64,000 nt of DNA. Origin: Pecten maximus. Its lineage: Eukaryota. Shown piece by piece: positions 12,756 through 33,700 of the stretch. The notes under the pieces were generated by a model. The model was given only the letters and a program-made list of their open reading frames with translations, made no database searches and was not told the DNA's origin. Where the stretch lies: positions 12,338,001 through 12,402,000 of the forward strand of contig NC_047030.1 of NCBI RefSeq assembly GCF_902652985.1, in the 5' to 3' direction. The position numbers and the translations under genes were made by a program. The number at the start of each line of letters is the position of its first letter. Within the stretch, counting starts at the first letter, position 1.

Positions 12756-15700
12756 CTACAAAGAGAGATAATTCAAATTTAAAACATAAACAGAAAGTCA
12801 AGAAGTTTCTTGTTTAAAAATGGAGCAAGTGCCACAATCTAACTTAACTGAATTAGCTGCTTTAACAAAAGTTTAACACAGACATATTTGAGGGGAATCT
12901 TTCATAAAATAGTAAATTTAGTGTTAATACTAAAAACTTTCATCCATGTAAAAATGATAACTGTATTTTTATTGAAAACAAATACATTGTACAGCATTTT
13001 CTTTTTAATTAGCAATGTAAATTTGTAAGATATAGACCCAATTGAGGTCATTAAAGCTTCGTCATTTGACTAGTTTCTTGTTTAAATGCTGAATTCGCAA
13101 ATGACAGATTAAGAGGCTCTGATCATTGACCCATTGGTGAAAGTTTAATACCGAAATAGCTGGTTTTGTCAAAATTTAATGTAGTCATAATTTTATGAGG
13201 GGAAATATTTTTTAAGATAATAAGTGCAGTATTATACTGGAAACTTTCACCTACCTGGTGAGCAAATGCTGGATCAGCATATGCTCGTCTGTAGAGGTCA
13301 CTCTGAAGCATCTCCTGCTCACGGCCTGCCAGCAGAGCTGCATGGTGAGGCAGTCCCTGGGGCAGGGATTGCAGGTGTTGCCCGGCGCTGGACGTCGGAG
13401 GGTTAGAGCTGCTCATTCCCGAGGCTAGAGGATCAGCTCCTGAAAAGCACCAATCAGAGAATGTGTTACAGTTTGTGTAGATGCTACCATAGAAACTAAA
13501 ATTCTTAAGGATGCGAACCATTCATTCAACAAGAATTCTATAATATTTTTATAGAAAACAATGAAAAAATATTTGCTATGTAATTCTAAGAATCAGATAT
13601 TGTGATGGTAACATATTTTCAACAAATGTCATAATAAAAGTATCAATGTAACAAATTATCTCAAAGCATAAAAGAGGTATTTTCTTTTACGAAAAAAAAC
13701 CCCAGTACCATAAAAAGCATTGCCTCCAATAATTATCTACAAACATGCCACTCATAGATCAAATGGCAGTATCTATTAATAACTTTTATCTAGGTCAATA
13801 TTGATAAATTGTGAGCTTGCATAAATCCCATCCCTGATGTTTTTACTAGGTACTAGGACATATATACATAAATGTCAGATCTTTACTTGTTGTAATTAAT
13901 CTTTTCAAGAAGTTTTGATATTGATCGTGTACTTTGTCACACGTAAACTTTAATCAATACATTAAATAACACAATTTATCAAATTTAGATATGCTAAAAT
14001 TATATCAATATAACCTTTTTAGATTAATTCCTCTGGCTGGTTTGAGGTCAACATGGAACTTATACAAACAAGGATAAATTCAAACACTACTGATGATATC
14101 AGTACTTGATCCCACCCACGTAATATATAGATAAACATTATATTGTGGTCTCACCATAACAGGTTTACAATAAACACAAGGTACAATGTCATTATTACTG
14201 TACCTATATACTGTATACAGGTGTGCTGGTGACAGTGTATTTCCATAGTAACATACAATGTAATTTTATATTTATACATTTGAAAAGTTAAATGGCCAGG
14301 TTATCAATTTAATGATAAGAATAGATCATATAGATAGTAGTATACCTGTCAAAAGGTCCAAACAGTAAAAACGGAGATCTCGATCTAGTATGGAAAGTCT
14401 TTCAAAAATTTTGGTTTAATATTTTATTGCTTAAATATTTTCTTATCAGCAACTGTTTTAAAGATAGGAAAAGTAGAAATGATGGATTTAAAAAACAAAA
14501 GTGTTAGAAAAATATTTTAGCTGGACATTGCTTTACTTTATTTACTAACATGTTTCCAAATGGTATCTCTGGTCCCAACTGTAAACAACTTGACAGGTAT
14601 GTAGTTAAAGAGTAATTCCATCACATTTCATGAAAGTATCACTGCCAGAGGTCACACACATGTATACAGTAGTGGGCATGCCATATCGAGAATCATCCAT
14701 AAGAAGTAGTATAGTAATTGCATGATAAGAGTATGCTGTCACTCAAAAAGTTTATCTTTTTAATTTTGGTTTTCAAAGTCTCCAACATTCTTGTCAAATT
14801 TGATTTGATGAAGTTCAGCACACACAAGAAATGGAAAAAAGACAAGAACACAAGCAGAAGATATTTCCAAGTAAAATTATTTTAAACTTTTTAGATAAGT
14901 GCATTCATTTTATTGAGAAAGTATACATACATGTTAAAGCATACAATCATGCTTTACATCAAAGTTTCTGAGAAATGTTTTTTGATATCATGTACACAAG
15001 TTTACACAGGTACAGCTTCATAACAAACATTCTTCTACATAATTCAGTTATAAAAAAAATATACAAAAAAATAAAAATACTTCAAAACAACAAAAGGATA
15101 GGAATAAAAAGCATCTAAGTTTGAAATAAAATAAAAAGGAACAAAAAAGGAGATAGGAGGAAGCAGGAAAAAAACTAATTGGGAACTAAGGCAAACAGGA
15201 AAGCAGAGGAAACCACGGACAATAATTGGACATGGCGGTCTTTCTTTAGAACGCACTTACTAGAAAACTGATAGGCCAAATGTGAGGTCGGATCAAGCAT
15301 ACCCCTATCATGCTTTGAGCGGAGGATGCACTCGTTAGAAACCCTTTGCATGTAGATTTGCTCATTTGTAAGGCGCTGAGTGTAAAATTGGTATATCATT
15401 CTTCCGGTCAATTGATCAGAATGTAGAATATCTGTAACGACAATTAGAGGTGTGATTAATTATGAGAGACGACGACGGCTTACCTGGGGGCAGGGGAGGG
15501 AGGAAATGGTGAGGCAGACCATGCAGCGAGGGGTGGTATGGAGCCCCTGATGCTGCTGCTGCTGCTGCTGCCGCTGCTGCTGCATCCTGCTGATGAAGGT
15601 GGAGATGCGTGTGCGAATGTGCGTGTGTGTGGGTGTGGCCAGACGGTGACACGCCCAGGTTTCCCATCTGCAGTCGAACCATCGGGTCGGTTGCGAGGGC

Positions 15701-18700
15701 CATACGCTCTGCATGTAGCCGCTCGGCCGACAGTCGCTCCACTGTGTTGGAGTATGCAGCCATGTCAGCACCAGGGTGCATAAGATGACACTGGGAGAGG
15801 CCTACACGTAAACAGGTAAAGAAAAGTCACTTGTGGAGTCAACCACAGTATTACCCGGCTACTGAAAACAATGGCTGTCTTCTCGATTTGTGCCTTCAAC
15901 TTACCTTCTACAGCTCACACAGCCAGGAAAACATTACACAGGAAGGCTAACAGCTATATCTATGAGATTTATTTCAAAAACTCCAAAGATTTTAAAAGAC
16001 AAATTTCTGAAAGGAAGCAGATTTCTGAACTCAATTTCTAGATTTTATCACAAATTTGTTTTTTATCCAAATATTTATATAAATATGTTAATCAATACAA
16101 AAGTTTGATGGTATAATAAATAAATGTGTCAGAGCTTTCAGGAGTAAAATTTTTCTTTGAAATATAAGAATTGTCTCCCTTGCTCTGTTGACAGGGCTTG
16201 GTAATGTTATTGTTTCCAGAAATGCATAGGTAAAAAAGAACTTCATTTTAAACACAAGACAAAACAGTGACATGAATAAAAACATATATCTACATACACA
16301 TTTTGTTTCTATCTTACTGGCAGTTCTTTTTTCCCTTTCAATTGAAGAAATCATCACAGGGTGGTTTCATTATATTTCAATTTCTTTTTTTTTCAGGTAA
16401 AAAAATCATACAGTACACAGAATCAATTCAATTATTTTTCATTCGATTATGGGAGAAATAGTGGTGTGAAATACCTTACTATAAACATGAAAATTTACGC
16501 AATTTAAAATAACTCACACACATAGAGTTTGTCTATGAAAATCGCAAAATTAAACCCCTGTGGAAATAACCATATTTACAGTAATGTCGGATGTACCTTA
16601 TATCCCCGGATTCTTAATTTGTGAACTTTTTTTTTCTATTGAAGATTGAACTTTTGAAATAGTCAGTAATGAATAAGCATTCCCCGATTATAATTTTTCC
16701 TCTCTCTGACACATTATATGAAAATAAACAACTGCACCAAACTAACAGTGTATCAAACAAAAGATTAAAAAAATCTAATCAGCCTACCTAGTCGCTCCAT
16801 CCTTTCCCGTTCTCGCTGTAAAAGGTCGCTGGCCAGACTTGTGGGTGGGTAGACTCCAGGGATATGGTGCCCCCCTCCCGGACCTCCTACATTAGCTGCC
16901 GACGGTAACACGTGACTGCCAGGCTGACAGAACCGTCGCTGTAGTTCCAGCCAATTGGAGTCTATCCCTGGCCCATGTGGTAGTATTCTGTCCAATCCTA
17001 AACAGACAGATTTTTATTGACACTTTAAATATACTGAAATTATTTCTTCTGAGTAAGTTTTGATAAACATTTTTTATCTATAAATCTAATTTCAGAATTT
17101 ATTTATTTTGAAATGAAAGTTATTTTAAAAACTTCGATCAACAGAGTTAAGATATTTCCCATTCACACTTCATATTCCCGGTTGTCTAATCCTGTTATCT
17201 TACACAAAGAATCGTGTAGTTTTTGATGAAAAAATTTCAAGTCCCGATGGTTTAGCTTCAAAAAAATAACTTTCAATCCCCAAGGAATCTGAAGCCAGGA
17301 CAATAGACTAAATCAGGAGATAGCATTAAAACGTATAGAAAATTACCTGGTTTACTAAGCTCTAAATCTGCTTTTAATTTTTCTCTCATTTCCATTTCTC
17401 GTATCTCTCTTTCCCGCAGTTCTCTCTCCCTGGCATCTCGTTCTCTTTTGTCCCGCTCGAGTTCCAATTCTAACCTGAAATATAAACATCAATATAAAAT
17501 TTTTAACAGTGATTATTTATTGCATATACATATTTTTTTTAAACTGGTATTATTTTCGTTTTATGCTATTCATGTACAAATGAAGTTTTATTTCTCGGAT
17601 TTGTTACAAAACAATTCATGACTTTAATTCAATTATTTTGATTTAGATGGAAATTTTCCTATTTCAGATTCTCTATCGGCTGGTACCTTTCGCGGGAGCC
17701 TGGTGGATACATAGCTGCCATTCGGTAGTCTAACAGGTGGTCCATACTATGTGGCATGCCTGCGTAGGAAAGAGATCGTGCAGGATCTGGGCCTGTCAAA
17801 ACACAAATTATTAACAGAAAAATTTTACCAAACTGTCCACAACAAAGAAATCAAGTTATAACTTACTGTAAATTTCTTGAAATATCAATGGAGAATGTGA
17901 ATGTTCTAAATCTAAGCACCTGAAAATTACACATATGGTACAATATATGAAATTTATTGAAATTACTCGTCTATTACATCTCATCCAGATTGTGACATTT
18001 CTTTTAACCTATATCTCGAGTTTGTTGGTTGCATTCTATGATCATGTTAGGCCCGAAGCATCACTGACGAGTCCTAGAAGGACAAAACAGCTGTATGATG
18101 TCCCTATTATCATTGGCGAGTACTGTAAGGACGAAACAGCTGTATGATGTCCCTAACATCACTGACCAGTCCTAGAAGGACGGAACAGTTGTATGATGTC
18201 CCTAACATTACTGACGAGTCCTAGAAGGATAAAACAGTCGTATGATGTCCCTAACATCACTGACGAGTCCTAGAAGGGCGAAACAGCTGTATAATGTCCC
18301 TAACATCACTGACCAGTCCTAGAAGGACGGAACAGTTGTATGATGTCCCTAACATTACTGATGAGTCCTAGAAGGACGAAACAGCTGTATGATGTCCCTA
18401 ACATCACTGACCAGTCCTAGAAGGACGGAACAGTTGTATGATGTCCCTAACATTACTGACGAGTCCTAGAAGGACAAAACAGCTGTATAATGTCCCTAAC
18501 ATCACTGACGAGTCCTAGAAGGACGAAACAGCTGTATGATGTCCCTAACATTACTGATGAGTCCTAGAAGGACGAAACAGCTGTATGAGGAACATCACTG
18601 ACGAGTCCTAGAAGGACGAAACAGCTGTATGATGTCCCTAACATTACTGACGAGTCCTAGAAGGACGAAACAGCTGTATGATGTCCCTAACATTACTGAC

Positions 18701-21700
18701 GAGTCCTAGGACGAAGCAGCTGTATGATGTCCCTAACATCACTGACGAGTCCTAGAAGGACGAACAGTTGTATGATATACCTAACATTACTGACGAGTCC
18801 TAGAAGGACGAAACAGCTGTATGATGTCCCTAACATTACTGACGAGTCCTAGGACGAAGCAGCTGTATGATGTCCCTAACATCACTGACGAGTCCTAGAA
18901 GGACGAACAGTTGTATGATATACCTAACATCATTGACGAGTCCTAGAAGGATGAAACCACTGTGTTACACAGTTCAATTCAGCTTGGCTCTGCTGTATCT
19001 GTTTCCGATTTGTTTGAATGGAGCCAATACCTTCTGTGTCGTTTGTACAATCCTTCCAATTTCTACTGAGGTATTAATCACTGGTGTTCAGTATACAAAA
19101 CTATCTCTAACTTTATCAATACTTTAAACTTCCAAAAATACTCTTATTTCTAAATACTTATACACCAACATTTGGGGGTTCATTTGGATTACTATCACAA
19201 CTCATACGGACTCATTCCAGAAGGAAGCCCGGCAATGTAATTGATGTCAAATTTGATTTTCTTCTCTGTTGACAAGTAAACTTGTACTTTACTAGATGTT
19301 CACAGAATATTTTTGTCAAACACAGAATCGTCTCCCTTTACCTAATTATATGCGAACACAACTTACCGTTTCTTCTCTGTTGACAAGTAAACTTGTACTT
19401 TACTAGATGTTCACAGAATATTTTTGTCAAACACAGAATCGTCTCCCTTTACCTAATTATATGCGAACACAACTTACCGGAACCCATAACATGAGGTTTT
19501 GCATATTCGCTGAGCTGGCGTAGGGCAGGAGTGTCGGGGTAGGATGAGCGAGGTGTATGGCGTTCATATGGGTTGTTTGGTGTTATACTGCTGGTGATCT
19601 GAGCATCTGCTGTCGAGTTTGGAGGAGGTGTTTCTGGTTTTTTCTGCACAATAATGACATAAATAGCATAAGATTTCATACAAGAGACCAAAAAGACAAA
19701 AGAAAAAAAGCATAATTCCAAAATAAAACAAAGGTTTCCACTTATTGTTATCAATGAAATAAATCATAATTAAATTAAGAAATTTCATGTTTCGGTTAAG
19801 TCTGTCTATTAACTGTTTTATGTCCGATTTCCTTAGTCAGTGAATACTGATGGTAAAAACATGTACAACATGTAGCTGTAGATGGGTAAGGCTACTTTTT
19901 ATTTTTAATTACTTAATCAACAACAAATTTATTTTACTGATTTAAAAGCAAAATATCAAAGTTACTGTAGTTTGCATACTGTATAATGGGAAGCTGTTAA
20001 TAGCATTAAACTTTACCACTTTCATCATATAGGAAAAGGGCAAATTTAACAGTGAGTCAAAAACAAACATTTTGCAAAAGATGGTGGGAAATTTTTGCAA
20101 AAACAAACATTTTGCAAAAGATGGTGGGAAATTTTGACTGGATCAAAAATATTGGCTTTTTATTGTCAGAAGGTGAAAGTTTCCTGGGGCAAAAGTTTCC
20201 CATCACACAGTAATTTTGTTCTTTGTAGAAAAATATAGATTAAAGCCGAGAGCTAGATAATGCCAAGACCTGGGTATTTTAGTACCGAAGATCAGGGTCA
20301 CTACTAACTTACAGCGCTAACAACCTTCTCTTCTGTCTTAACCGGGGTGTGAGTCGGTGCTGCCCTCTTACGAGCCAGTTTGGAATCGGGATGCGGTCTG
20401 AAGACAATATCACAACGAGAGCAGCAGTTGTTTTCTCCTCTGTTCAGCACTTTCATTAGTCTATGGGGTGAAATGAATCGTAACATGTCAAACTGGGTAG
20501 CGTATTATCAAACATTCGGAAAGATTTCCTTTTTTAAGTTTTAAGAGAAGTGATATTGTTTTCGACAAGAACAGCAAATGGTGTCTTCTTTCAGTTACTG
20601 GCCAATGGTTTACAGCCAACATATGATTTAACCAATTATAATTATGTTGTGTCTTATATTTGCTTACATATTCGTCGAAAATCAACTCCTTTACAAAAAT
20701 GGCCAGAGGAGCTAAATTTATATTCAAAACAAGATCATAGTTATCATAACTGGTTTCATGACACATGTATCGAAGCATTTGATTTTGTATAGAAATGACC
20801 AGATTCTGATTTAAAAGACTGACAATATAAACAAATGACTTTTAGGTATAATTGTACTTACAATGCATTTTCAGACTTATACATTTCTAAGCTACATCGC
20901 GTCGGGTCTGGCCCTGGCGTGGTCGTTCCTCCTTCGTGGTCCGATTCTTCCTCTTCCTCCATCACAACACTGGTCTCACACACAGGAGTGGCCGGCTCAG
21001 ACTTGACCCCCACCCCTGGGGTCAATTTCTCTATCGAGCTTGCATCCACAGTAGAAGAGGGAGAAATCAGTTCTTTTGGGGTGGTGGGCGGTTCATGAAT
21101 GTGTGGATGGGGCCCATGAGGTGTAGCCCCATGGGGGATGGGCCTAAGAGGAGAAGGTCCATGTGATAGAGGTCCATGAAGGGAAGGCCCATGTGATGAT
21201 GATCCATGTGATGAAGGTCCGTGTGAGGGAAGCCCATGTTGGGGAGGGCCATGGGGGGAAGGTCCATGTGGGGAAGGTCCATGTGGGTGTGGAGGTCCAT
21301 GTAGGGAAGGTCCGTGGGGATTGATTCCATGGGAAGAAGGCCCATGGGGAGATACTCCGTGAGAATGTCCATGTGAGGGAGTTATGTGTGGGGGAGGTCC
21401 ATGTGGGTGAGATACATGGAGGGGAGGGGTTTTATTGTCCGATCTACTACTCACAGAGTCTAACACTCGACTGTTTGATACCACTGTACTACTAGCACTA
21501 GACTCCAATCCAGGTTTAGAGAAATCAAATGGTTGAAATGACTCTGGCCGGTTTGAGAAACTAGACAAAGGTTCTGACTTGACTATTACACTATTCATGC
21601 TAGATTTCTCCTCAACTGCACTAGGCCGAGAGGCTGGATTGTCCATTAGCAGCTTGGTAGCCCCGAAGCTGTGTTTAGGAGATGGCGGTGGAGACAAAGG

Positions 21701-24700
21701 CTCCTTCTTAATGGGAACTGTATTTGTGTGGAGGTCATCGAGGCGGACAGGTGTTGACGAGGTACTGGAAGTGCTGACCTGAGGTAATGATAGCGGTGCC
21801 CTCGTGTGCAGCGATGATAATGATGGCGATGTGAAAGGTGACGTTTCTCGGTGGAAAGCAAGATCCTGAGGAGTGCTGCATTGGAGTGACAGCGGCATGG
21901 ATGGCGTTGTTGTGGGCAACAGCTTCTCCGATGGTAATTTCTGTGATGACGGTAGAGAAATCGAAGATGACAATGGTACGAGTGGGGGACAGGACGACAC
22001 AGGGGAGAGAGGGTGTGAATGGTGGGGGAGGTGATGAGTAGGAGGGGGGAGAAGTTGTGACACAGGAGGGGGTGACGTATGAGGATGGTGGATATGTGCT
22101 GGCTCCGGCCGCACAAGTGGCACCTTATCGTGAAGGTTGGCCACGGTGGCGGTGGAAGTAGGAGTGACAACAGTTGTCACCGGAGACTGAACAGAGGTGC
22201 TGGTTGTAGAACTTTGTGAGGACACCGGAGGTTTACTGGACTTGAAGTCGGTGTCTACAGAGCGCGGAGTGCTGGGAGGTGAGGACGAGCTAAGGTCATC
22301 CTGGAACAGACAGACAGACAGGGTCAGCCACTTGTCTACCGTGTAATAACCCACACCTAGCACAACCTTATCACCATAGGTTTAATATCAACCTAAGTCA
22401 TACCCAGTACCCTGATCCTATAATAACCCTATATCTTACATTAACCCAGTAATGTAGCACCCTTATGTTGTAATAACCAATAACCAACTACCCTGATATT
22501 ACGTTAACTCAGTAGCCTAGTACAATTCTTCTAGTACCCCAATTTTACAATAACCCAGTAACTTGATCATACTAAAACCCAGAAAACCAATAACCTGATT
22601 GTACTATAACCCAGTAACCAGAACTTATAAACACCCAGTATCCTAGTACTAACTGTACCCAGAAGTTGAATAACCCAGTAACCTTCATTTGTATAGTTCC
22701 ATTAATTTGCAACAACCCAATAATCTAGTATCTTAATTTTACATACAATAACCTAAGTACATCCATGACCTACCTCACAGTTATTCTATCAATACATTAT
22801 CCACATCCCCTATCAACAATCACCTGGCTCAAGAAACAATGGTAACCCTGGTTACCAATCTCTGTAGACCACCATTAGCCCTATAAACTCTGGTTACCAA
22901 TCTCTGTAGACCACCATTAGCCCTATTAACCCTGGTTTCCAATCTCTGTAGACCATCATTAGCCCTATAAACCCTGGGTACCAATCTCTGTAGACCACCC
23001 CCTGGTTACCAATCTCTGCAGACCATCATTAGCCCTATAAACTCTGGTTACCAATCTCTGTAGACCATCATTAGCCCTATTAACCCTGGTTACCAATCTC
23101 TGTAGCCCATCATTAGCCCTATAAACCCTGGTTACCAATCTCTGTAGACCACCATTAGCCCTATTAACCCTGGCTACCAATCTCTGTAGACCACCCCCTG
23201 GTTACCAATCTTTGTAGACCACCATTAGCCTATTAACCCTGGTTACCAATCTCTATAGACCACCAATAGCCCTATAAACCCTGGTTACCAATCATTAGCC
23301 CTATAAACCCTGGTTACCAATCTCTGTAGACCAACATTAGCCCTATAAACCCTGGTTACTGATCGCTGTAGAACTCAATTAGCCTAGTAACCCCGGTTAC
23401 CAATCTCTCTAGACTACCATCAGCCCTATAAACCCTGGTTACCAATCTCTGTAGATCTCTTTTAGCCACATTCCCAACACACGGCTGTATAGTAAAGTGC
23501 AGAAAATATCTCTTAAAAAGTGAGTTGTGTTAGGTGCAGATAACATAGTAGAGAGCATATACAGACATCAGACACATAGTAGACAGTCTTACTATAATAC
23601 ACAACAGATGTACAGTAGATGTTATATACCACATTACACTAGTAGACAGTCTTACCAAACACACAACAGATTATAGAAACAGAAAAACCTGACTTTACTG
23701 ACACACTGGGGGGACCGCATCAATGTGTCGGATATGAGAGTGGAACATATGTACATCACAGTTGGATGATACAGTCACAGTTCTGATGGATACGGTCGGA
23801 TGATACAGTCACAGTTCTGTATGGATACGGTCAGATGATACAGTCACAGTTCTGTATGGATACGGTCGGATGATACAGTCACAGTTCTGTATGGATACGG
23901 TCGGATGATACAGTCACAGTTCTGTATGGATACGGTTGGATGATATAGTCACAGTTCTGTATGGATACGGTCGGATGATACAGTCACAGTTCTGTATGGA
24001 TACGGTCGGATGATAGTCACAGTTCTGTATGGATACGGTCGGATGATAGTCACAGTTCTGTATGGATACGGCCGGATGATATAGTCACAGTTCTGATGGA
24101 TACGGTCGGATGATATAGTCACAGTTCTGTATGGATACGGTCGGATGATACAGTCACAGTTCTGTATGGATACAGTCGGATGATATAGTCACAGTTCTGT
24201 ATGGATATGGTCGGATGATACAGTCACAGTTCTGTATGGATACGGTCGGATGATACAGTCACAGTTCTGTATGGATACGGTCGGATGATACAGTCACAGT
24301 TCTGTATGGATACGGTCAGATGATATAGTCACAGTTCTGTATGGATACAGTCGGATGATAGTCACAGTTCTGTATGGATACGGTCGGATGATAGTCACAG
24401 TTCTGTATGGATATGGTCGGATGATACAGTCACAGTTCTGTATGGATATGGTCGGATGATAGTCACAGTTCTGAATGGATACGGTCGGATGATAGTCACA
24501 GTTCTGAATGGATACGGTCGGATGATATAGTCACAGTTCTGTATGGATACGGTCGGATGATATAGTCACAGTTCTGAATGGATATGGTCGGATGATATAG
24601 TCACAGTTCTGTATGGATACGGTCGGATGATAGTCACAGTTCTGAATGGATACGGTCGGATGATATAGTCACAGTTCTGTATGGATACGGTCGGATGATA

Positions 24701-27700
24701 GTCACAGTTCTGTATGGATACGGTCGGATGATACAGTCACAGTTCTGTATGGATACGGTCGGATGATACAGTCACAGTTCTGTATGGATACGGTCGGATG
24801 ATACAGTCACAGTTCTGTATGGATACGGTCGGATGATACAGTCACAGTTCTGTATGGATACAGTCGGATGATACAGTCACAGTTCTGTATGGATACGGTC
24901 GGATGATACAGTCACAGTTCTGTATGGATACGGTCAGATGATACACTATGTTGTTAAAGTTGGTGGTCAGTAAAGTCAGGTTTCACTTAACATAGTAGAC
25001 ATTCTTACCAAAATACATCAGATAATTAATACATAGTAGACAATAGATTTATAGTAGACAATAGATTGGTAGTAAACAATAGATTTATAGTAGACAATAG
25101 ATTGGTAGTAAACAATAGATTTATAGTAGACAATAGATTGGTAGTAAACAAAAGACACATAGTATAATTCTATATCACATTACACTATAACAGTAAACAT
25201 ACTAAAATATCAGATATATCATACAACTGATATGTTACATCCTATATACAAAATGTAAATACATCACAATATTATCAATATTATATACATTATACATTTA
25301 AACATTTACAAAATACTAAATCAGCAGATATATGAATTTTCAGACATGAAATTAATCATCAAGAAGCTGCCAGCTAGTTTAAATTTGATTTTATCCCTAT
25401 GACTCGACCTTGGATAGGACTTCTGACCTTGACCTTTGATCCATACCTGATTGTTCTCTATATCTCCCTCGTTACCATTCTCTTCATCATTCCCAGATAG
25501 ACTGCTGCTGTCAGATACTGACTCAGAATCAGACCGGTCCTGTGAATAAACAATTTATATGATCAAAGCCTGTCTCTATATCAGACAGCACTTCTAGACA
25601 TGCCTTTGACATTGTTATGGTGTTTTGGATTGAACTGACGGGTAAATGTCTAATAAACTTTGACTCAGTACTAACATCAATATATAATACCTCAGCTTTC
25701 TTCTTCTTGTTGTGTTTGTCCTCGGAATCGGAGTTAGCCTGTCGCTTCTTGCCCTTGTTCTGGGCCTCAGCTGTCTTCTGTAATGAAAATGTTATAGCAA
25801 TTATGGTGTCACTTTCCTGTTATCACCTGTTTAATCTCCATTTCTATAACACATGGCCTACATAAAACTGATTTTATGACCTAGATATACTAACCTTGAC
25901 CTGTAAACCCAATCTCTATAACACATAATCTTGATATAACCAATTCCTATGACCTAGTTTTACCAACCTTGACCTTTACCTGTAAACCCAATCTCTATAA
26001 CACATAACCTTGATATAACCAATTCCCATGACCTAGATATACTGACCTTGACCTGTAAACCCAATCTCTATAACACATAACTTTGATATAAACCAATTCC
26101 TATGACCAAGATATACTGACCTTGACCTTCCTCTGTGTGTCTGTGCTACTATTGCTGCAGGTACTACCAGTACTTGGAGACTTACGACCGCGTGCCAGTG
26201 GAGCTAGTGTATTCAGTGGACTGTCCACAATATCCGGACTACTAGTACTATTATTTCTTTCCTTTCTTTTGCCTTTTGTCTGCAACAAAAAACAATTTAA
26301 AATTCATTTAAATCGTTCTCAATTCAAATTTGAATTTTGCCTTATTAACATAAATGAAGCAAAGGAGAATATGATGGTGTAATTGTTATTTCTCTTATTT
26401 AACTTATCAATTTATTTCAACACAATAAATAGTGAATGACTATTACTCACCGATTCCCGAGTCTGTCGTGTTCGCATATTGTGTCGACCGTTGACAGAGT
26501 CCTCTTCCTTGACTGGCTGGAAGAGGAAGGGAGATGGGTCGCGGGATGAGGGGTCTCGTGTTGAAGAGTCGCGTGGACTCTCTAAGGGCCGCTCTTCCCC
26601 ATAGCGTTTGAAGTGGAGGCGACATTCTGTACAGCGGAGACTCTTGTCTTTACCAGCATGGTGCCAGTCTTTGGACACTGCAATAAGAATTATATATCTG
26701 TACTAACATAATCCCATTAGTAATGTATATCTACTTAATACTGTACTAACATACAGGTCCAATGTATAATTTAATTTGTACAAACTTAAGGGTTCTGGTT
26801 TATCTAGATTTGAACTATCTATAGGGCCCTGCATGATTTCAATTTCTATTGATCTAAGAGGTCCTAAATGAATTGGAGATATACCCCTCTGATGATCTCA
26901 GGAATCGTGAATGATTTTAATAGCTATAATGTGTGAAGTCATGTTGTGTTGACAAACAAACAAACAAACAAACAAACAGAACTAACTAACTTAGAGGCCC
27001 TATATAATTTTGACCGGTATCAAAGTAAGTAGTCTTGCATGATATACATTAGTATTGATATAATATATAATCTTTATTTGGATTGGAAAACGGGTTCTGT
27101 ATGATTTATATTTGAACTGATCTAAGGGCCCAGTATAATCTTATTTGGATTGGTATAAGGGGTCCTGTATGATTTATATTTGACTATCTACGGGGGGCCT
27201 AGTATAATCTTTATTTGGATTGGTATAAGGGGTCCTGTATGATTTATATTTGAACTGATCTAAGGGGCCCAGTATAATCTTTATTTGGATTGGTATAAGG
27301 GGTCCTGTATTATTTATATTTGAACTGATCTAAGGGGCCCAGTATAATCTTTATTTGGATTGATATAAGGGGTCCTGTATGATTTATATTTGAACTGATC
27401 TAAGGGGCCCCGTATAATCTTTATTTGGATTGGTATAAGGGGTCCTGTATGATTTATATTTGAACTGATCTAAGGGGCCCAGTATAATCTTTATTTGGAT
27501 TGGTATAAGGGGTCCTGTATGATTTATATTTTGAACTGATCTATGGGGCCCAGTATAATCTTTATTTGGATTGGTATAAGGGGTCCTGTATGATTTATAT
27601 TTGAACTGATCTAAGGGGCCCAGTATAATCTTTATTTGTACTGTATGTTTGGTTTGTTTTTTGCTTTACGTCCTATTAACAGCCAGGGTCATTTAAGGAC

Positions 27701-30700
27701 GTGCCAGGTTTAGAGGTGGAGGAAAGCCGGAGTACCCGGAGAAAAACCACCGGCCTACAGTCAGTACCTGGCAACTGCCCAACGTAGGTTTCGAACTCGC
27801 AACCCAGAGGTGGAGGGCTAGTGATAAAGTGTCGGGACACCTTAACCACTGTATGTACTGATCCAACCAGTCCTAATTGTACTGACCTAGCTCTTCCATA
27901 AACGAGGTCTAGCTGGTTCACATTTTTACATTTCTATCTGGTGTACAGTGAGCACTTTAGCACCTTTCACTGCTACTACCAATTCCTCCACCAATTCATC
28001 AGGGAACTTTTCTAACAAACTTGTGTAATTTCACAGGTTGTGTATGACTAAGAGGCCAGCTAAGTGAGCGTTAACTTTTGTTACCAGGTCTCTTGCCCCA
28101 GAAACTGTTCCCCACAGATCAATAGCCATATACTACTGCACACTCCAAAATTAATGTGTCTGCTGCATATGTTGCAGGGACTGTTCTTAAACTTCCCATA
28201 ACCACATCAGGTAAATTTAGGTTTTGCCTTCCTGGGACAGATTAAAAGTCCAATAATTCTCATGGTAGAACATACATCCATGCAGGTACTACAGACTGGT
28301 TGAATTCCCAGACTCAAGTTGTCACACCAATAACAACAGAATTTTATATTGTCATTAGATATACCAGCCCTTCTATTGTCATTAGATATACCAGCCCTTT
28401 GGGAAATGAGACCACACTTGCCCAAATCTCTTCATAAAAGTATCTATTTTATCATCAATGTATCAAAAGAGATTGCAAGAATCACTGTAAGCAAAGGTGA
28501 GAAAATAAAGTTTAAAAACAAGTTCATTATCATATCATATTCTTGTTAACTACAATATACTCGGATACTTATTCTTAACTAGTTATTACATTTATTATGA
28601 AGACTTATTCTTATTAACTACTACATCATCACAAGGACTTATTCTTGTTAACTATTACATTATCACAAGGACTTATTCTTGTTAACTATTACATCATCAC
28701 AAGGACTTATTCATGTCAATTATTACATCATCACAAGGACTTATTCTTGTTGACTATTACATCATCACAAGGACTTATTCTTGTTGACTATTACATCATC
28801 ACAAGGACTTATTATTGTCAACTATTACATCATCACATGGACTTATTCTTGTTAACTATTACATCATCACAAGGACTTATTCTTGTTAACTATTACATTA
28901 TCACATGGACTTATTCTTGTCAACTATTACATCATCACATGGACTTATTCTTGTTAACTATTACATCATCACAAGGACTTATTCTTGTTAACTATTACAT
29001 CATCACAAGGACTTATTCTTGTTAACTATTACATCATCACATGGACTTATTCTTGTTAACTATTACATCATCAAATGGACTTATTCTTGTCAACTATTAC
29101 AGTATTGCAAGGACATACTTGCCACACCAATTTGGGAAGGAGACCCCTGATTTGGATCCCAAGAGAAAATTTCTTCATTATAATTCAGAAACTCCAATTA
29201 GTTCACCAGGAAGAAGAGTTTAAAATACATAGTTCTGGGGTATTAATTTATCGAGGGAAGTCTATATATAAGTGTATTGTTCCAAAGCACATGCATTCTC
29301 CTCAATGGCAATTTTTTGAAAGCTGGCAATCACCTCATGAGAACTTGCGTCTTGGAAACCATTACATTATCACAAGGAGTAATCCTTGTATATTACCATA
29401 TTCAAAGTTAAAAACCATTTCTCTTCTATGTCTTACATTTTATCCTATACTAACTCATGATAAATACCTGTGGTGAGCGAGAATTGTAGCTTGTTCAGAT
29501 GTAGCACACCCTGCCTACTGTAGACAGGGAAGCCTGACAGAGTTTAATTGACATTAGCATTACTTCTGATAGTTCTCTACAGCCTGTAACTTTTATTACA
29601 GACTGACAGGGGAGATGCATATCTCTTAATTTCTGTAAATCCCCGCCTCCTGGCAGCCATTTTGACTCCCCCCTAACACATTAATGAGGCTAGTACAGCG
29701 TTTGAGAGCAGGGACAGCTAGGGAAGCTATTTCTAAGTTGTCATTCCAGACCGATCTAATATGCCTTGCAGAAGCTTCCTAGAATGTATTCAGCTTTTGT
29801 AAGTCACATGATATATATATATATATATCACTGTAAAATGCTCCTTTCTTCATATGAATTTCCACAGGCAGCCTGATCACTGTGGCTGTGAGCTTCACAT
29901 AGGGTAGAGTGTGGAGCGCTGCGAGGGGTGTACAACACAAAACATCTTATCAGGTATGGGCCCACACACCACTATCATCAAATCCACATTAAACTACAAA
30001 GCTAAGTCCTTTACGATAGCTTTATATTTTTTCCACCTCTTTTTCACCAGCAAATTCCTCCCTTTCACAGCTCAAAGCAGTCGTATATCTGTGTTATAGT
30101 GATGCTATCATCAAATTAATAGGGAACCAACCAAATTTGTTAACCATCCGTTTTCACGTGATCTGTCCAATACACGGCTGTGCAAGCAGCATTGTCAGCA
30201 CGATTGATTTGTACACATGACTCTGGCTGTCAGCGCCTTCCCCGTTATAATCAGCTTTTACGCATGGCCGACCCCAAAGCAGTATCAGCCATGGTTGAGC
30301 GGGAACATGACCAGAAATAGGTAAGACTAACTATCTGCCTAGCCTCACCAGTAGCTCATCATTGTGGTATGAGCAGGCTTTGTTCCCTATTTACTCCCAG
30401 TCATCCGTTGCCTACTCTTTTAACATCTAGCTAAAACATTCTGACAGTCGAGCTGTAAAGCTATAGGGTACAACAGTATTTTCTTTATCAAGAATGTGCA
30501 GTGAATGAGGATTTAATGAACACTTTGGTGCAATTACAATATTTATATATCGCAGCCCTCTCGCTATCCAATGTCAGCCCTCTTTTAGCAAAGAAGGGGC
30601 CATCCCTTCCAGTACCACAAGGTTGTCTCCTTCTTTAGTGGCCTAGGGTCCCAAAACCTCCTTCTACAGGGATATTCTCTTCTTTGGTATCTCAAGGTCC

Positions 30701-33700
30701 CACACATATAGTTGTGCAGGACCATCCCCTTTAGTGTCTCAGGGTCCCACACCTATAGTTATACAGGGTCATCCCCTTCTTTAGTGTCTCAGGGTCCCCC
30801 ACCTATAGTTGTACAGGACCATCCACCTTCCTTAGTGTCTCAGGGTCCCCCACCTATAGTTGTACAGGACCATCCACCTTCCTTAGTGTCTCAGGGTCCC
30901 CCACCTATAGTTGTACAGGGCCATCCCCTTCAGTGTCTCAGGGTCCCCACCTATAGTTCTACAGGGCCATCCCCTTCTTTAGTGTCTCAGGGTCCCCCAC
31001 CTATAGTTGTACAGGGCCATCCCCTTTAGTGTCTCAGGGTCCCCACCTATAGTTCTACAGGGCCATCCCCTTCTTTAGTGTCTCAGGGTCCCCACCTATA
31101 GTTCTACAGGGCCACCCCCTTCTTTTGTGTCACAGGGTTCCCCACCTATAGTTCTACACAGCCATCCCTTTCTTTAGTGTCTCAGGGTCCCCACCTATAG
31201 TTGTACAGGGCCATCCCCTTCTTTAGTGTCTCAGGGTTCCCCACCTATAGTTCTACAGGGCCATCCCCTTCAGTGTCTCAGGGTCCCCACCTATAGTTCT
31301 ACAGGGCCATCCCCTTCTTTAGTGTCTCAGGGTTCCCCACCTATAGTTCTACAGGACCATCCCCTTCTTTAGTGTCTCAGGGTCCCCACCTATAGTTGTA
31401 CAGGGCCATCCCCTTCTTTAGTGTCTCAGGGTCCCCCACCTATAGTTCTACAGGACCATCCCCTTTAGTGTCTCAGGGTCCCCACCTATAGTTCTACAGG
31501 GCCATCCCCTTCTTTAGTGTCTCAGGGTCCCCCACCTATAGTTCTACAGGACCATCCCCTTTAGTGTCTCAGGGTTCCCACACCTATAGTTCTACAGGGC
31601 CATCCCCTTCTTTAGTGTCTCAGGGTCCCCCACCTATAGTTCTACAGGACCATCCCCTTTAGTGTCTCAGGGTCCCCACCTATAGTTCTACAGGGCCATC
31701 CCCTTCTTTAGTGTCTCAGGGTCCCCCACCTATAGTTCTACAGGACCATCCCCTTTAGTGTCTCAGGGTTCCCACACCTATAGTTCTACAGGGCCATCCC
31801 CTTCTTTAGTGTCTCAGGGTCCCCACCTATAGTTCTACAGGGCCATCCCCTTCTTTAGTGTCTCAGGGTCCCCCACCTATAGTTCTACAGGGCCATCCCC
31901 TTCTTTAGTGTCTCAGGGTCCCCACCTATAGTTCTACAGGGCCATCCCCTTCTTTAGTGTCTCAGGGTCCCACACCTATAGTTCTACAGGGCCATCCCCT
32001 TCTTTAGTGTCTCAGGGTCCCCCACCTATAGTTCTACAGGGCCATCCCCTTTAGTGTCTCAGGGTCCCCACCTATAGTTCTACAGGGCCATCCCCTTTAG
32101 TGTCTCAGGGTCCCCACCTATAGTTCTACAGGACCATCCCCTTCTTTAGTGTCTCAGGGTCCCCACCTATAGTTGTACAGGGCCATCCCCTTCAGTGTCT
32201 CAGGGTCCCCACCTATAGTTCTACAGGGCCATCCCCTTCTTTAGTGTCTCAGGGTCCCCACCTATAGTTCTACAGGGCCATCCCCTTCAGTGTCTCAGGG
32301 TCCCCACCTATAGTTGTACAGGACCATCCCCTTTAGTGTCTCAGGGTCCCCACCTATAGTTGTACAGGGCCATCCCCTTTAGTGTCTCAGGGTCCCCACC
32401 TATAGTTGTACAGGGCCATCCCCTTTAGTGTCTCAGGGTCCCCACCTATAGTTCTACAGGACCATCCCCTTTAGTGTCTCAGGGTCCCCCACCTATAGTT
32501 CTACAGGGCCATCCCCTTCTTTAGTGTATCAGGGTCCCCCACCTATAGTTCTACAGGGCCATCCCCTTTAGTGTCTCAGGGTCCCCACCTATAGTTCTAC
32601 AGGGCCATCCCCTTTAGTGTCTCAGGGTCCCACACCTATAGTTCTACAGGGCCATCCCCTTTAGTGTCTCAGGGTCCCACACCTATAGTTGTACAGGGCC
32701 ATCCCCTTCTTTAGTGTCTCAGGGTCCCCCACCTATAGTTCTACAGGGCCATCCCCTTCTTTAGTGTCTCAGGGTCCCCCACCTATAGTTCTACAGGGCC
32801 ATCCCCTTCTTTAGTGTCTCAGGGTCCCCCACCTATAGTTCTACAGGGCCATCCCCTTCTTTAGTGTCTCAGGGTCCCACACCTATAGTTCTAAAGGGCC
32901 ATCCCCTTCTTTAGTGTCTCAGGGTCCCCCACCTATAGTTCTACAGGGCCATCCCCTTCTTTAGTGTCTCAGGGTCCCCCACCTATAGTTCTACAGGGCC
33001 ATCCCCTTCTTTAGTGTCTCAGGGTCCCCCACCTATAGTTCTACAGGGCCATCCCCTTCTTTAGTGTCTCAGGGTCCCCACCTATAGTTCTACAGGGCCA
33101 TCCCCTTCTTTAGTGTCTCAGGGTCCCCCACCTATAGTTCTACAGGGCCATCCCCTTCTTTAGTGTCTCAGGGTCCCCACCTATAGTTCTACAGGGCCAT
33201 CCCCTTCTTTAGTGTCTATGGTCCCCCACCTATAGTTCTACAGGGCCATCCCCTTCTTTAGTGTCTCAGGGTCCCCACCTATAGTTCTACAGGGCCATCC
33301 CCTTCTTTAGTGTCTATGGTCCCCCACCTATAGTTCTACAGGGTCATCCCCTTCTTTAGTGTCTATGGTCCCCCACCTATAGTTCTAAAGGGCCATCCCC
33401 TTCTTTAGTGTCTCAGGGTCCCCACCTATAGTTCTAAAGGGCCATCCCCTTCTTTAGTGTCTCAGGGTCCCCCACCTATAGTTCTACAGGGCCATCCCCT
33501 TCTTTAGTGTCTCAGGGTCCCCACCTATAGTTCTACAGGGCCATCCCCTTCTTTAGTGTCTCAGGGTCCCACACCTATAGTTCTACAGGGCCATCCCCTT
33601 CTTTAGTGTCTCAGGGTCCCCCACCTATAGTTCTACAGGGCCATCCCCTTTAGTGTCTCAGGGTCCCCACCTATAGTTCTACAGGGCCATCCCCTTTAGT

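What the first reader, a model, noticed from the sequence alone, without database searches (positions are those of the whole stretch)
18058..18965. Minisatellite made of hammerhead ribozymes: 19 tandem 49-nt minimal type I hammerheads, antisense inside a RERE intron
Seen in sequence: each unit reads ACATCA CTGA(C/T)GA GTCC tagaa GGAC GAAAC agct GTA TGATGT cccta. All conserved hammerhead elements are in order: stem I (6 bp), CUGAnGA, stem II (4 bp with a 5-nt loop), GAAA, a 2-bp stem III inside the palindrome ACAGCUGU, and a GUA (NUH) cleavage site, e.g. after 18536. About 7 units keep an intact core (starting ~18254, 18352, 18499, 18548, 18592, 18641, 18784). Established knowledge: minimal type I hammerheads with a palindromic helix III occur in Penelope-like elements, non-LTR retrozymes and newt/schistosome satellites, and cleave as dimers (double hammerhead). 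Those monomers are typically some hundreds of nt. Inference: here the monomer is almost only the ribozyme, and adjacent intact units (18499-18685) could pair their ACAGCUGU palindromes into double hammerheads. A + strand transcript would cut itself into 49-nt multiples with 5'-OH and 2',3'-cyclic phosphate ends, which RtcB could circularise. This could be an ultra-minimal retrozyme or a self-destruct cassette for antisense transcription. The RERE sense strand has no core, so its pre-mRNA would be spared.
Basis: partly seen in the sequence, partly recalled or inferred. Interest (0 to 1): 0.92.

Follow-up and report, generated by a model that had tools for sequence, protein, structure and literature searches.

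The report
Dispersed 49-bp hammerhead ribozyme minisatellite
The 900-base run of 19 head-to-tail copies of a 49-base self-cutting RNA motif is real, but it is one worn copy of a mobile-element family found at several hundred places in this mollusc-like genome, not a device built for the gene it sits in.

Summary
Observation confirmed. Window 18058-18957 is an 18.6-copy, 49-bp tandem array. Each unit is a minimal type I hammerhead on the + strand only. Two units pass Rfam's Hammerhead_1 gathering score, and 7 of 19 keep an intact core.

A single unit is predicted to misfold. Two adjacent units fold as the classical double hammerhead. The 55-nt stretch across a unit boundary folds as a complete type III hammerhead.

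The locus is not unique. The same unit gives 528 exact 32-nt core matches genome-wide (0 in the control), and I fetched 43 separate arrays.

- Many arrays sit between a conserved head of about 120 nt or more and a tail of about 95 nt. The array is therefore the body of a non-autonomous mobile element.
- Arrays grow at the DNA level. Here a 143-bp block holding two dead units is duplicated exactly.
- The window holds about 25 other minisatellites.

No strand-resolved or locus-specific RNA evidence could be obtained. No partner element was identified, and there is no robust sign of selection on the core.

The closest known kind is the non-LTR retrozyme or PLE-type hammerhead repeat. Monomers as short as 51 bp are already reported.

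First-stage readers of this scan noted the same satellite many times on other pieces of this genome.

The parts
17947..18057 (+). Conserved 'head' of the mobile element, directly upstream of the first unit. Weaker similarity to longer heads of other copies runs back to about 17897.
   Evidence: A profile built from heads of other loci matches 17947-18054, E 1.7e-17. Heads adjoin 14 of 43 arrays. Longer 5' extents occur in some copies. BLAST of 17900-18057 finds 11 other copies at 73-84% identity.
18058..18957 (+). Array of 19 units (18.6 copies) of the 49-bp minimal type I hammerhead.
   Evidence: TRF, Rfam matches on the + strand only, unit parse.
18499..18542 (+). Unit 10 hammerhead, over Rfam's gathering score. 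The GUA cleavage site ends at 18536.
   Evidence: Hammerhead_1, 35.8 bits against 34.
18592..18689 (+). Units 12-13, an intact dimer predicted to form a double hammerhead. Predicted cuts are after 18629 and 18678.
   Evidence: The minimum-energy fold is the double hammerhead: -26.9 kcal/mol, z -3.3, 1 of 200 shuffles as good. Hammerhead_1 scores are 35.8 and 33.1 bits.
18333..18387 (+). Junction 6|7: type III-permuted hammerhead spanning a unit boundary. The cleavage site belongs to dead unit 6 (after 18340) and the core to intact unit 7.
   Evidence: Hammerhead_3, 39.9 bits, E 1.1e-6, below the gathering score of 48.5.
18529..18583 (+). Junction 10|11: 55-nt segment that folds as a complete type III hammerhead.
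   Evidence: Minimum-energy fold has helix III of 7 bp, helix I hairpin of 6 bp with loop CCCUA, helix II, and an unpaired core. Energy -15.7 kcal/mol, z -3.27, 0 of 200 shuffles.
18622..18676 (+). Junction 12|13: same type III-permuted fold.
   Evidence: -15.7 kcal/mol, z -3.27, 0 of 200 shuffles.
18641..18926 (+). Exact duplication of a 143-bp three-unit block (18641-18783 equals 18784-18926). Each block holds one intact and two dead units.
   Evidence: 0 mismatches over 143 bp. The dead units have a helix II loop deletion plus GAAGC, and a GAAA-to-GAA deletion.
18958..19058 (+). Conserved 'tail' of the mobile element. Conservation ends at the motif TTTGTACAATCCTT (about 19044-19057).
   Evidence: Tail profile matches 18968-19099, E 7.6e-26. 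Tails adjoin 18 of 43 arrays. The 3' boundary was located. At least 165 first-look copies of a tail exist in the genome, at 77-89% identity.
15479..15751 (-). Host gene exon with an Atrophin-1 domain (context, not part of the element).
   Evidence: PF03154, 54.6 bits, E 1.8e-12, profile positions 816-901, at G000:C16:12353479-12353751.
20858..22363 (-). 501-aa Pro/Ser/His-rich open frame, probably a large atrophin-type coding exon (context).
   Evidence: ORF list and translation. No Pfam match.

Best explanation
The array is the body of one old, partly decayed copy of a dispersed non-autonomous mobile element. The element is built as head (about 120 nt or more), then n units of a 49-bp hammerhead, then tail (about 95 nt).

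Shown here:
- The family has several hundred arrays on all chromosomes, in both orientations.
- The smallest fetched copy has two units, and others have up to about 50.
- Arrays grow locally by DNA-level duplication that copies dead units as readily as live ones.

Predicted from folding:
- A lone 49-nt unit misfolds, because core CUG pairs with CAG of helix III.
- In a + strand transcript of two or more units, neighbouring ACAGCUGU palindromes pair into a 7-8 bp helix III.
- The 3' helix I strand of unit n and the 5' strand of unit n+1 close into a hairpin over the CCCUA linker.
- The result is a complete type III-like hammerhead at each junction, which is the inner half of a double hammerhead. 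It would cut after GUA.

Inferred, not shown:
- The element moved as RNA. I read it as a retrozyme-like or SINE-like retroposon with a fixed 3' end and variable 5' extent. The partner is unknown, and a Penelope-like element is suspected.
- The ribozyme served to trim its transcript.
- The founder carried about two units, which later expanded as an ordinary minisatellite.

At this locus the copy lies antisense in a probable intron of an atrophin-family gene and has no evident host function.
For: Motif and strand.

Dispersal:
- 168 scored matches and 638 first-look places for one dimer.
- All 29 Hammerhead_1 matches in the genome are this 49-nt family.
- 528 exact 32-nt core matches against 0 for the reversed control.
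- 7.6% of my 748 sampled units match that word, which suggests very roughly 7,000 units.

Cassette:
- Heads adjoin 14 and tails 18 of 43 arrays, and 8 arrays have both, at E <= 1e-3.
- L086 is head + 2 units + tail, about 300 bp.
- One genomic copy has head and tail 100 bp apart.
- The 3' end is sharp and the 5' extent variable.
- There are no terminal inverted or direct repeats.

DNA-level growth:
- Exact 143-bp block duplication, and identical dead units 3, 6 and 8.
- Private variants fill single arrays, for example 22 units in L023.
- About 25 other minisatellites lie in the same 64 kb.

Folding.

RNA libraries hold the repeat and array-to-tail junctions of other copies.

Canonical Penelope-like elements (RVT_1 plus C-terminal GIY-YIG) are present in the genome.

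Published model: local tandem amplification of hammerhead-bearing Penelope-like-element termini by unequal crossover, with family consensus lengths of 51-972 bp (10.64898/2026.07.22.740005).
Against: - No cleavage, strand or end information could be obtained, because all runs were contigs.
- No target-site duplications could be defined, and the 5' end is fuzzy.
- Loci with head only (6) and tail only (10) are both frequent, so 5' truncation is not clear-cut.
- No hammerhead was found within 1.4-1.5 kb of 30 GIY-YIG loci. No head or tail match was found there, and no Penelope-like-element protein match was found beside the 43 arrays.
- There is no robust selection signal. Unit-level divergence is 7% in the core and 11% in loop and linker.
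- The lower variability of core and stems among array consensuses vanishes when only the loci picked by BLAST, not by the hammerhead model, are counted.
- Compensatory changes are nearly all from one array.
Confidence: 0.55

Rival explanations
1. True ultra-minimal retrozyme. The mobile unit is the ribozyme alone. Multimeric transcripts cut themselves into 49-nt (or 98-nt) RNAs. These are circularised by RtcB or by the ribozyme, then copied by rolling-circle reverse transcription into tandem arrays that integrate.
For: - The monomer is almost nothing but the ribozyme, and the junction-spanning fold is complete.
- The family is dispersed in both orientations.
- 19 of 43 arrays show no recognisable head or tail.
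- Retrozyme circular RNAs are established in mussel, coral and axolotl (PMC7229834).
- Penelope-like elements are present.
Against: - Conserved unique head and tail flank most well-preserved arrays, including two-unit copies.
- Array growth copies dead units exactly.
- By geometry, hammerhead-mediated ligation would join two monomers rather than close one (inference).
- No small-RNA or circular-RNA data were available.
Confidence: 0.12
2. DNA-mediated cassette of the bivalve 'pearl'/DTC84 or Helentron-associated type. A non-autonomous DNA element has a central tandem-repeat module that happens to derive from a hammerhead. The ribozyme plays no part in mobility, and the CAGCTG palindrome merely promotes array length change.
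For: - The left flank, tandem core, right flank architecture is well known in bivalves, with a palindrome near each repeat junction (PMC3879986).
- The window and genome are rich in minisatellites.
- There is no poly(A) and no clear 5'-truncation bias.
Against: - No terminal or subterminal inverted repeats: score 23 against shuffles of 19 +/- 3.
- No microsatellite module was seen beside the arrays in the junction sequences printed.
- Hammerheads in eukaryotic repeats are otherwise tied to retroelements (PMC4209133, PMC7761336).
Confidence: 0.15
3. Host-adopted device. The array destroys antisense (+ strand) transcripts through the atrophin-family intron, or yields regulatory small RNAs.
For: Antisense, probably intronic placement. 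Three competent junctions remain.
Against: - 12 of 19 units are dead.
- The same element sits at hundreds of unrelated places.
- The true RNA libraries gave no coverage of this locus's unique flanks.
Confidence: 0.03

Closest known systems
Non-LTR retrozymes of animals (type I hammerhead tandem repeats; Cervera & de la Pena 2020, PMC7229834; Li, Clavereau & Pollet 2026 preprint, 10.64898/2026.07.22.740005)
   Same: - A type I hammerhead in every monomer.
- Head-to-tail arrays from dimers to tens of copies.
- Many dispersed loci and low GC.
- Helix III too weak for monomer activity, so dimers are needed.
- Penelope-like elements are present in the same genome.
- Local amplification by unequal crossover has been proposed for them.
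   Different: - The monomer is 49 bp: ribozyme plus a 5-nt linker, with no body. Typical sizes are 150-450 bp, and the reported minimum is 51 bp.
- Arrays are framed by a conserved unique head and tail.
- Circular RNA was not tested here.
[quoted passage not shown] 2017, cited in PMC7761336)
   Same: Small hammerheads that act as dimers, often two in tandem, in the terminal non-coding part of a retroelement.
   Different: - Here helix I is 6 bp, helix II 4-5 bp, and helix III is a 2-bp stem in an 8-nt palindrome. That is the classical metazoan type I layout, not the form with long helix II and no helix III.
- No Penelope-like-element reading frame lies next to any of 43 arrays.
- No hammerhead lies next to 30 GIY-YIG loci.
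Newt satellite 2, Schistosoma Sm-alpha and Dolichopoda pDo500 hammerhead satellites (as reviewed in PMC4209133 and PMC3088659)
   Same: Satellite or SINE-like repeats that encode type I hammerheads. The double-hammerhead mechanism works through a palindromic helix III (Forster et al. 1988, as cited).
   Different: Those monomers are about 330-500 bp with one ribozyme each. Here the ribozyme is the whole monomer.
Tandem-repeat-containing elements of bivalves (DTC84, pearl; Satovic & Plohl 2013, PMC3879986)
   Same: The flank, variable tandem core, flank 'cassette' plan. A palindrome sits near the repeat junction, and copy number varies from element to element.
   Different: No inverted repeats and no microsatellite module were found. 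The core repeat here is a ribozyme.

Membership tests
Hammerhead ribozyme, type I (Rfam RF00163) | Conserved core CUGANGA ... GAAA, with A15.1-U16.1 and a non-G residue at the cleavage site. | tested here: met
   7 of 19 units here. 220 of 748 sampled family units.
Hammerhead ribozyme, type I (Rfam RF00163) | Covariance-model score at or above the curated gathering score. | tested here: met
   35.8 bits against 34 for two units. Four more score 29.9-33.1 bits. 21 matches elsewhere in the genome are over the cut-off.
Hammerhead ribozyme, type I (Rfam RF00163) | Three helices that form in the predicted fold. | tested here: inconclusive
   Not in the monomer, whose minimum-energy fold pairs core CUG. 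Yes in the dimer and in the 55-nt junction segment.
Hammerhead ribozyme, type I (Rfam RF00163) | Site-specific self-cleavage. | not testable with these tools
   Needs in vitro transcription. Only contigs were available, so no RNA ends could be seen.
Non-LTR retrozyme | Head-to-tail repeats, each with a type I hammerhead, at many loci. | tested here: met
Non-LTR retrozyme | Monomer of about 150-450 bp carrying non-ribozyme sequence. | tested here: not met
   The monomer is 49 bp with only a 5-nt linker. A preprint gives a lower bound of 51 bp.
Non-LTR retrozyme | Monomer-length linear and circular RNAs in vivo. | not testable with these tools
   RNA libraries hold the repeat, but as contigs without ends or strand.
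Non-LTR retrozyme | Co-occurrence with Penelope-like elements. | tested here: met
   150 GIY-YIG places. L034 and L044 have RVT_1 plus a C-terminal GIY-YIG.
Penelope-like-element pseudo-LTR hammerhead | Lies in the terminal repeat next to the RT-GIY-YIG reading frame. | tested here: not met
   No hammerhead in 30 (regex) or 20 (Rfam) GIY-YIG loci. No Penelope-like-element protein match in the flanks of 43 arrays. The sample is limited to 1.5-kb flanks.
Tandem-repeat MITE (DTC84/pearl type) | Flanks with short inverted repeats. | tested here: not met
Tandem-repeat MITE (DTC84/pearl type) | Conserved flanks framing a variable tandem core. | tested here: met
Tandem-repeat MITE (DTC84/pearl type) | Fixed short target-site duplication. 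| tested here: inconclusive
   The 5' boundary is too fuzzy to call.
SINE (small-RNA-derived head) | tRNA-, 5S- or 7SL-like head with an internal Pol III promoter. | tested here: not met
   ARAGORN finds no tRNA in the 43 loci. Rfam at E <= 10 finds only hammerheads in 17500-19500.

The most novel reading that the evidence does not exclude
The family is the smallest self-processing mobile RNA yet seen. It would be a ribozyme-only retrozyme whose 49-nt period is exactly one hammerhead. Tandem transcription turns it into a complete type III ribozyme across each junction. The released 49- or 98-nt RNAs would be circularised and reverse-transcribed. Head and tail would then be remnants of the element that first carried it.
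Probability: 0.1. Interest if true: 0.8.

Novelty: new variant of a known kind. Interest (0 to 1): 0.4.

Why it matters
- It sits at or just under the reported lower size limit for hammerhead-bearing repeats.
- It shows in natural sequence how tandem repetition converts a weak type I motif into a complete type III-like ribozyme with both loops closed.
- It gives a compact test case, a 98-nt dimer and a 55-nt junction segment, for dimer-dependent cleavage.
- It also lets one ask how small a ribozyme-made circular RNA can be.
- For genome annotation, it explains several hundred 'hammerhead satellite' loci in this genome as one mobile-element family. It also warns against reading any single copy as a gene-specific device.

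Tried and rejected
1. Terminal inverted repeats. Head against reverse-complemented tail scores 23, against shuffles of 19 +/- 3 (maximum 34). The direct comparison scores 24. The repeat finder and flank BLAST also found nothing.

2. LTR-like direct repeats: none.

3. tRNA-derived head, a lead from note s1-783940. No tRNA in 43 loci, and no small-RNA family in the head.

4. Link to Penelope-like elements. Regex and Rfam scans of GIY-YIG loci, head and tail profiles against them, and tblastn of their proteins against array loci were all negative.

5. Link to a LINE. A LINE ORF2 C-terminal fragment lies near three arrays (L062, L072, L076). Orientations differ and the intervening DNA is not homologous, so I take it as coincidence.

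6. Selection on the core.
   - Array consensuses seemed 3-fold less variable in core and stems than in loops.
   - That signal comes from the loci I had picked with the hammerhead model.
   - My hand count from the table for the BLAST-picked loci (L001-L030) is 6 changes over 26 constrained sites against 3 over 11 free sites.
   - I rejected it as selection bias.

7. Covariation. The 17U-23A double change is significant by Fisher test, but 22 of 23 cases are in one array. Helix I shows no compensation.

8. Expression.
   - Contigs of four runs, two of them certainly RNA, hold the repeat and array-to-tail junctions.
   - In the two true RNA runs this locus's unique flanks have no depth. Two runs of uncertain type show depth of about 2-5 there.
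   - No strand or ends are visible, and a DNA carry-over origin for short repeat contigs cannot be excluded.

9. A metagenome pattern scan gave 0 hits.

10. Pfam on window ORFs gave nothing useful. ELM2 and GATA searches did not place RERE's N-terminal domains near the window.

Heads and tails found could not be fetched.

Full report
**What is there**

Tandem Repeats Finder reports a single array at 18059-18957: period 49, 18.6 copies, 87% matches. I parsed it into 19 units.

The consensus unit reads, in order:
- ACAUCA (helix I, 5' strand)
- CUGAYGA (core)
- GUCC-UAGAA-GGAC (helix II)
- GAAA (core)
- CAGCUGU (helix III within the palindrome ACAGCUGU)
- A (cleavage-site residue)
- UGAUGU (helix I, 3' strand)
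- CCCUA (linker)

Rfam gives 14 hammerhead matches in 17500-19500, all on the + strand. Two Hammerhead_1 matches at 35.8 bits exceed the gathering score of 34. They are the only gathering-level matches in the whole window.

Seven units keep the whole core: those starting at 18254, 18352, 18499, 18548, 18592, 18641 and 18784.

The others carry specific lesions:
- G8-to-C plus A13-to-G in the identical units 3, 6 and 8.
- G12-to-A in units 1 and 9.
- A loop deletion plus GAAGC in units 14 and 17.
- A one-base deletion in GAAA in units 15 and 18.

The block 18641-18783 is repeated without a single difference at 18784-18926.

**How the ribozyme would work**

- Folded alone, a 49-nt unit does not adopt the hammerhead. 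Its best structure lengthens helix I by pairing core CUG with CAG of helix III (-12.0 kcal/mol, z -1.9).
- The 55-nt stretch from CAGCUG of one unit to CAGCUG of the next folds as a textbook three-way junction.
  - It has a 7-bp helix III, a 6-bp helix I closed by the CCCUA linker, helix II, and an unpaired core.
  - Energy is -15.7 kcal/mol, z -3.27, with 0 of 200 shuffles as stable.
- The 98-nt dimer 18592-18689 has the full double hammerhead as its minimum-energy structure (-26.9 kcal/mol, z -3.3).
- Rfam sees the same permutation as Hammerhead_3 at 18333-18387 (39.9 bits, E 1e-6, below gathering).

In an array, the 'linker' is therefore loop 1 of a type III-like ribozyme that borrows its second helix III strand from the neighbour. 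This is the dimer mechanism known from newt satellite 2 and proposed for repeat-type animal hammerheads (PMC4209133; PMC3088659).

At this locus only junctions 6|7, 10|11 and 12|13 have every required part. Cleavage itself is inferred, not shown.

**The locus is one of many**

- The genome (918,306,378 bases, 3,983 contigs, at least 19 large contigs) gave 168 scored matches and 638 first-look places for one dimer.
- All 29 Hammerhead_1 matches in the genome are this same 49-nt unit, spaced at multiples of 49.
- An exact 32-nt core word occurs 528 times (302 forward, 226 reverse), against 0 for the reversed control.
- Only 7.6% of my 748 sampled units carry that exact word. The family therefore probably has several thousand units in a few hundred arrays. 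This is a rough extrapolation.
- First-stage notes of this scan describe the same satellite on many other pieces of the genome.
- The assembly statistics match what I recall for the king scallop, Pecten maximus. That is memory, not a tool result.

**The array is the body of a composite element**

Among 43 distinct arrays, profiles built from the flanks find two conserved parts:
- A head directly upstream of 14 arrays.
- A tail directly downstream of 18 arrays.
- Both are present at 8 arrays, including the window copy.

Further observations on the element:
- The smallest fetched copy (L086) is head + 2 units + tail, about 300 bp.
- Another genomic copy has head and tail 100 bp apart.
- The 3' end is sharp, with conservation stopping after TTTTGTACAATCCTT.
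- The 5' extent varies, and some copies carry about 100 nt or more of extra head.
- Tails alone give at least 165 first-look places at 77-89% identity. The family is therefore old.
- There are no terminal inverted or direct repeats.
- There is no tRNA-like head.

**How arrays grow**

- Units within an array share private variants.
- Dead units are duplicated exactly.
- The same 64 kb contains about 25 other minisatellites with 20-150-bp units, one of them 4.5 kb long.

Expansion of a short founder (about two units) by unequal exchange is thus the ordinary behaviour of this genome. It needs no RNA step. This matches the model in the 2026 preprint on animal retrozymes, which also reports family consensus lengths from 51 to 972 bp.

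**What could not be established**

I found no autonomous partner.
- Canonical Penelope-like elements exist (RVT_1 plus C-terminal GIY-YIG).
- Thirty such loci have no hammerhead, head or tail within 1.4-1.5 kb.
- No array flank encodes their protein.
- A LINE fragment near three arrays looks coincidental.

Evidence for selection on the ribozyme is weak.
- Within arrays, all parts decay at similar rates: 7% in the core against 11% in loop and linker.
- The apparent constraint among array consensuses disappears when loci chosen with the hammerhead model are left out.
- The one clear compensatory pair is confined to one array.

RNA evidence is limited to contigs.
- Two true RNA-seq runs and two runs of uncertain type hold the repeat and array-to-tail junctions of other copies.
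- In the two true RNA runs this locus's unique flanks have no depth. Two runs of uncertain type show depth of about 2-5 there.
- Nothing shows strand, ends or circles.

**Gene context**

An Atrophin-1 domain exon lies on the minus strand at 15479-15751. A 501-aa Pro/Ser/His-rich minus-strand open frame lies at 20858-22363. The element therefore most likely lies antisense in an intron of an atrophin-family gene. ELM2 and GATA searches did not find RERE's N-terminal domains near the window, so 'RERE' is plausible but unproven.

**Verdict**

The thing itself is a decayed copy of a dispersed, non-autonomous element whose hammerhead dimer has been blown up into a minisatellite. It is closest to non-LTR retrozymes and Penelope-like-element-type hammerhead repeats.

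It is unusual in three respects:
- The monomer is the ribozyme alone.
- Arrays are framed by a conserved head and tail.
- The junction-spanning fold is complete.

I did not find this family described in the papers I could search.

Noticed in passing
window 1-64000 (e.g. 30662-35202, 23764-24945, 49396-50984, 44102-45174): The window is packed with minisatellites: about 25 distinct arrays with units of 20-150 bp. They include a 4.5-kb array of a 50-bp unit (93.5 copies) that explains the GC-rich, skewed stretch at 30-36 kb.
   Followed up: partly
window 19258-19479: A perfect two-copy tandem duplication of a 111-bp unit (100% identity), about 200 bp downstream of the element's tail.
   Followed up: no
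window 15479-15751 (-) and 20858-22363 (-): An Atrophin-1 domain exon and a large Pro/Ser/His-rich open frame with HGPSPHGP-type repeats. This is probably an atrophin/RERE-family gene on the minus strand. No ELM2 or GATA exon was detected nearby.
   Followed up: partly
L023 (G000:C16:34234526-34237621): An array of 53 units in which 22 carry a double change that turns the closing C-G pair of helix II into U-A. This is one compensatory event spread through a single array.
   Followed up: partly
L034 and L044 (G000:C19:28616249-28619503; C7:33873958-33877221): Canonical Penelope-like elements (RVT_1 followed by a C-terminal GIY-YIG) with no Rfam-detectable hammerhead in the 1.4 kb downstream of the reading frame. 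The literature reports hammerheads as universal in such elements.
   Followed up: partly
L047 1999-2139: A long, near-perfect hairpin (MIR2600-like match, 60.3 bits, below gathering) beside a GIY-YIG locus. It is probably an inverted-repeat element rather than a microRNA.
   Followed up: no
G000:C6:8728842-8745981: Four copies of the element's tail with identical match statistics, spaced about 4.3-8.4 kb apart. This suggests a segmental tandem duplication that contains the element.
   Followed up: no
L069 (oriented 1693-1869): The tail occurs twice, separated by the 3' part of a hammerhead unit. This suggests recombination between array and tail.
   Followed up: no
L021 2536-3096: An exon encoding a CARD domain (PF00619, E 8e-22) lies about 360 bp from a 35-unit hammerhead array.
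   Followed up: no
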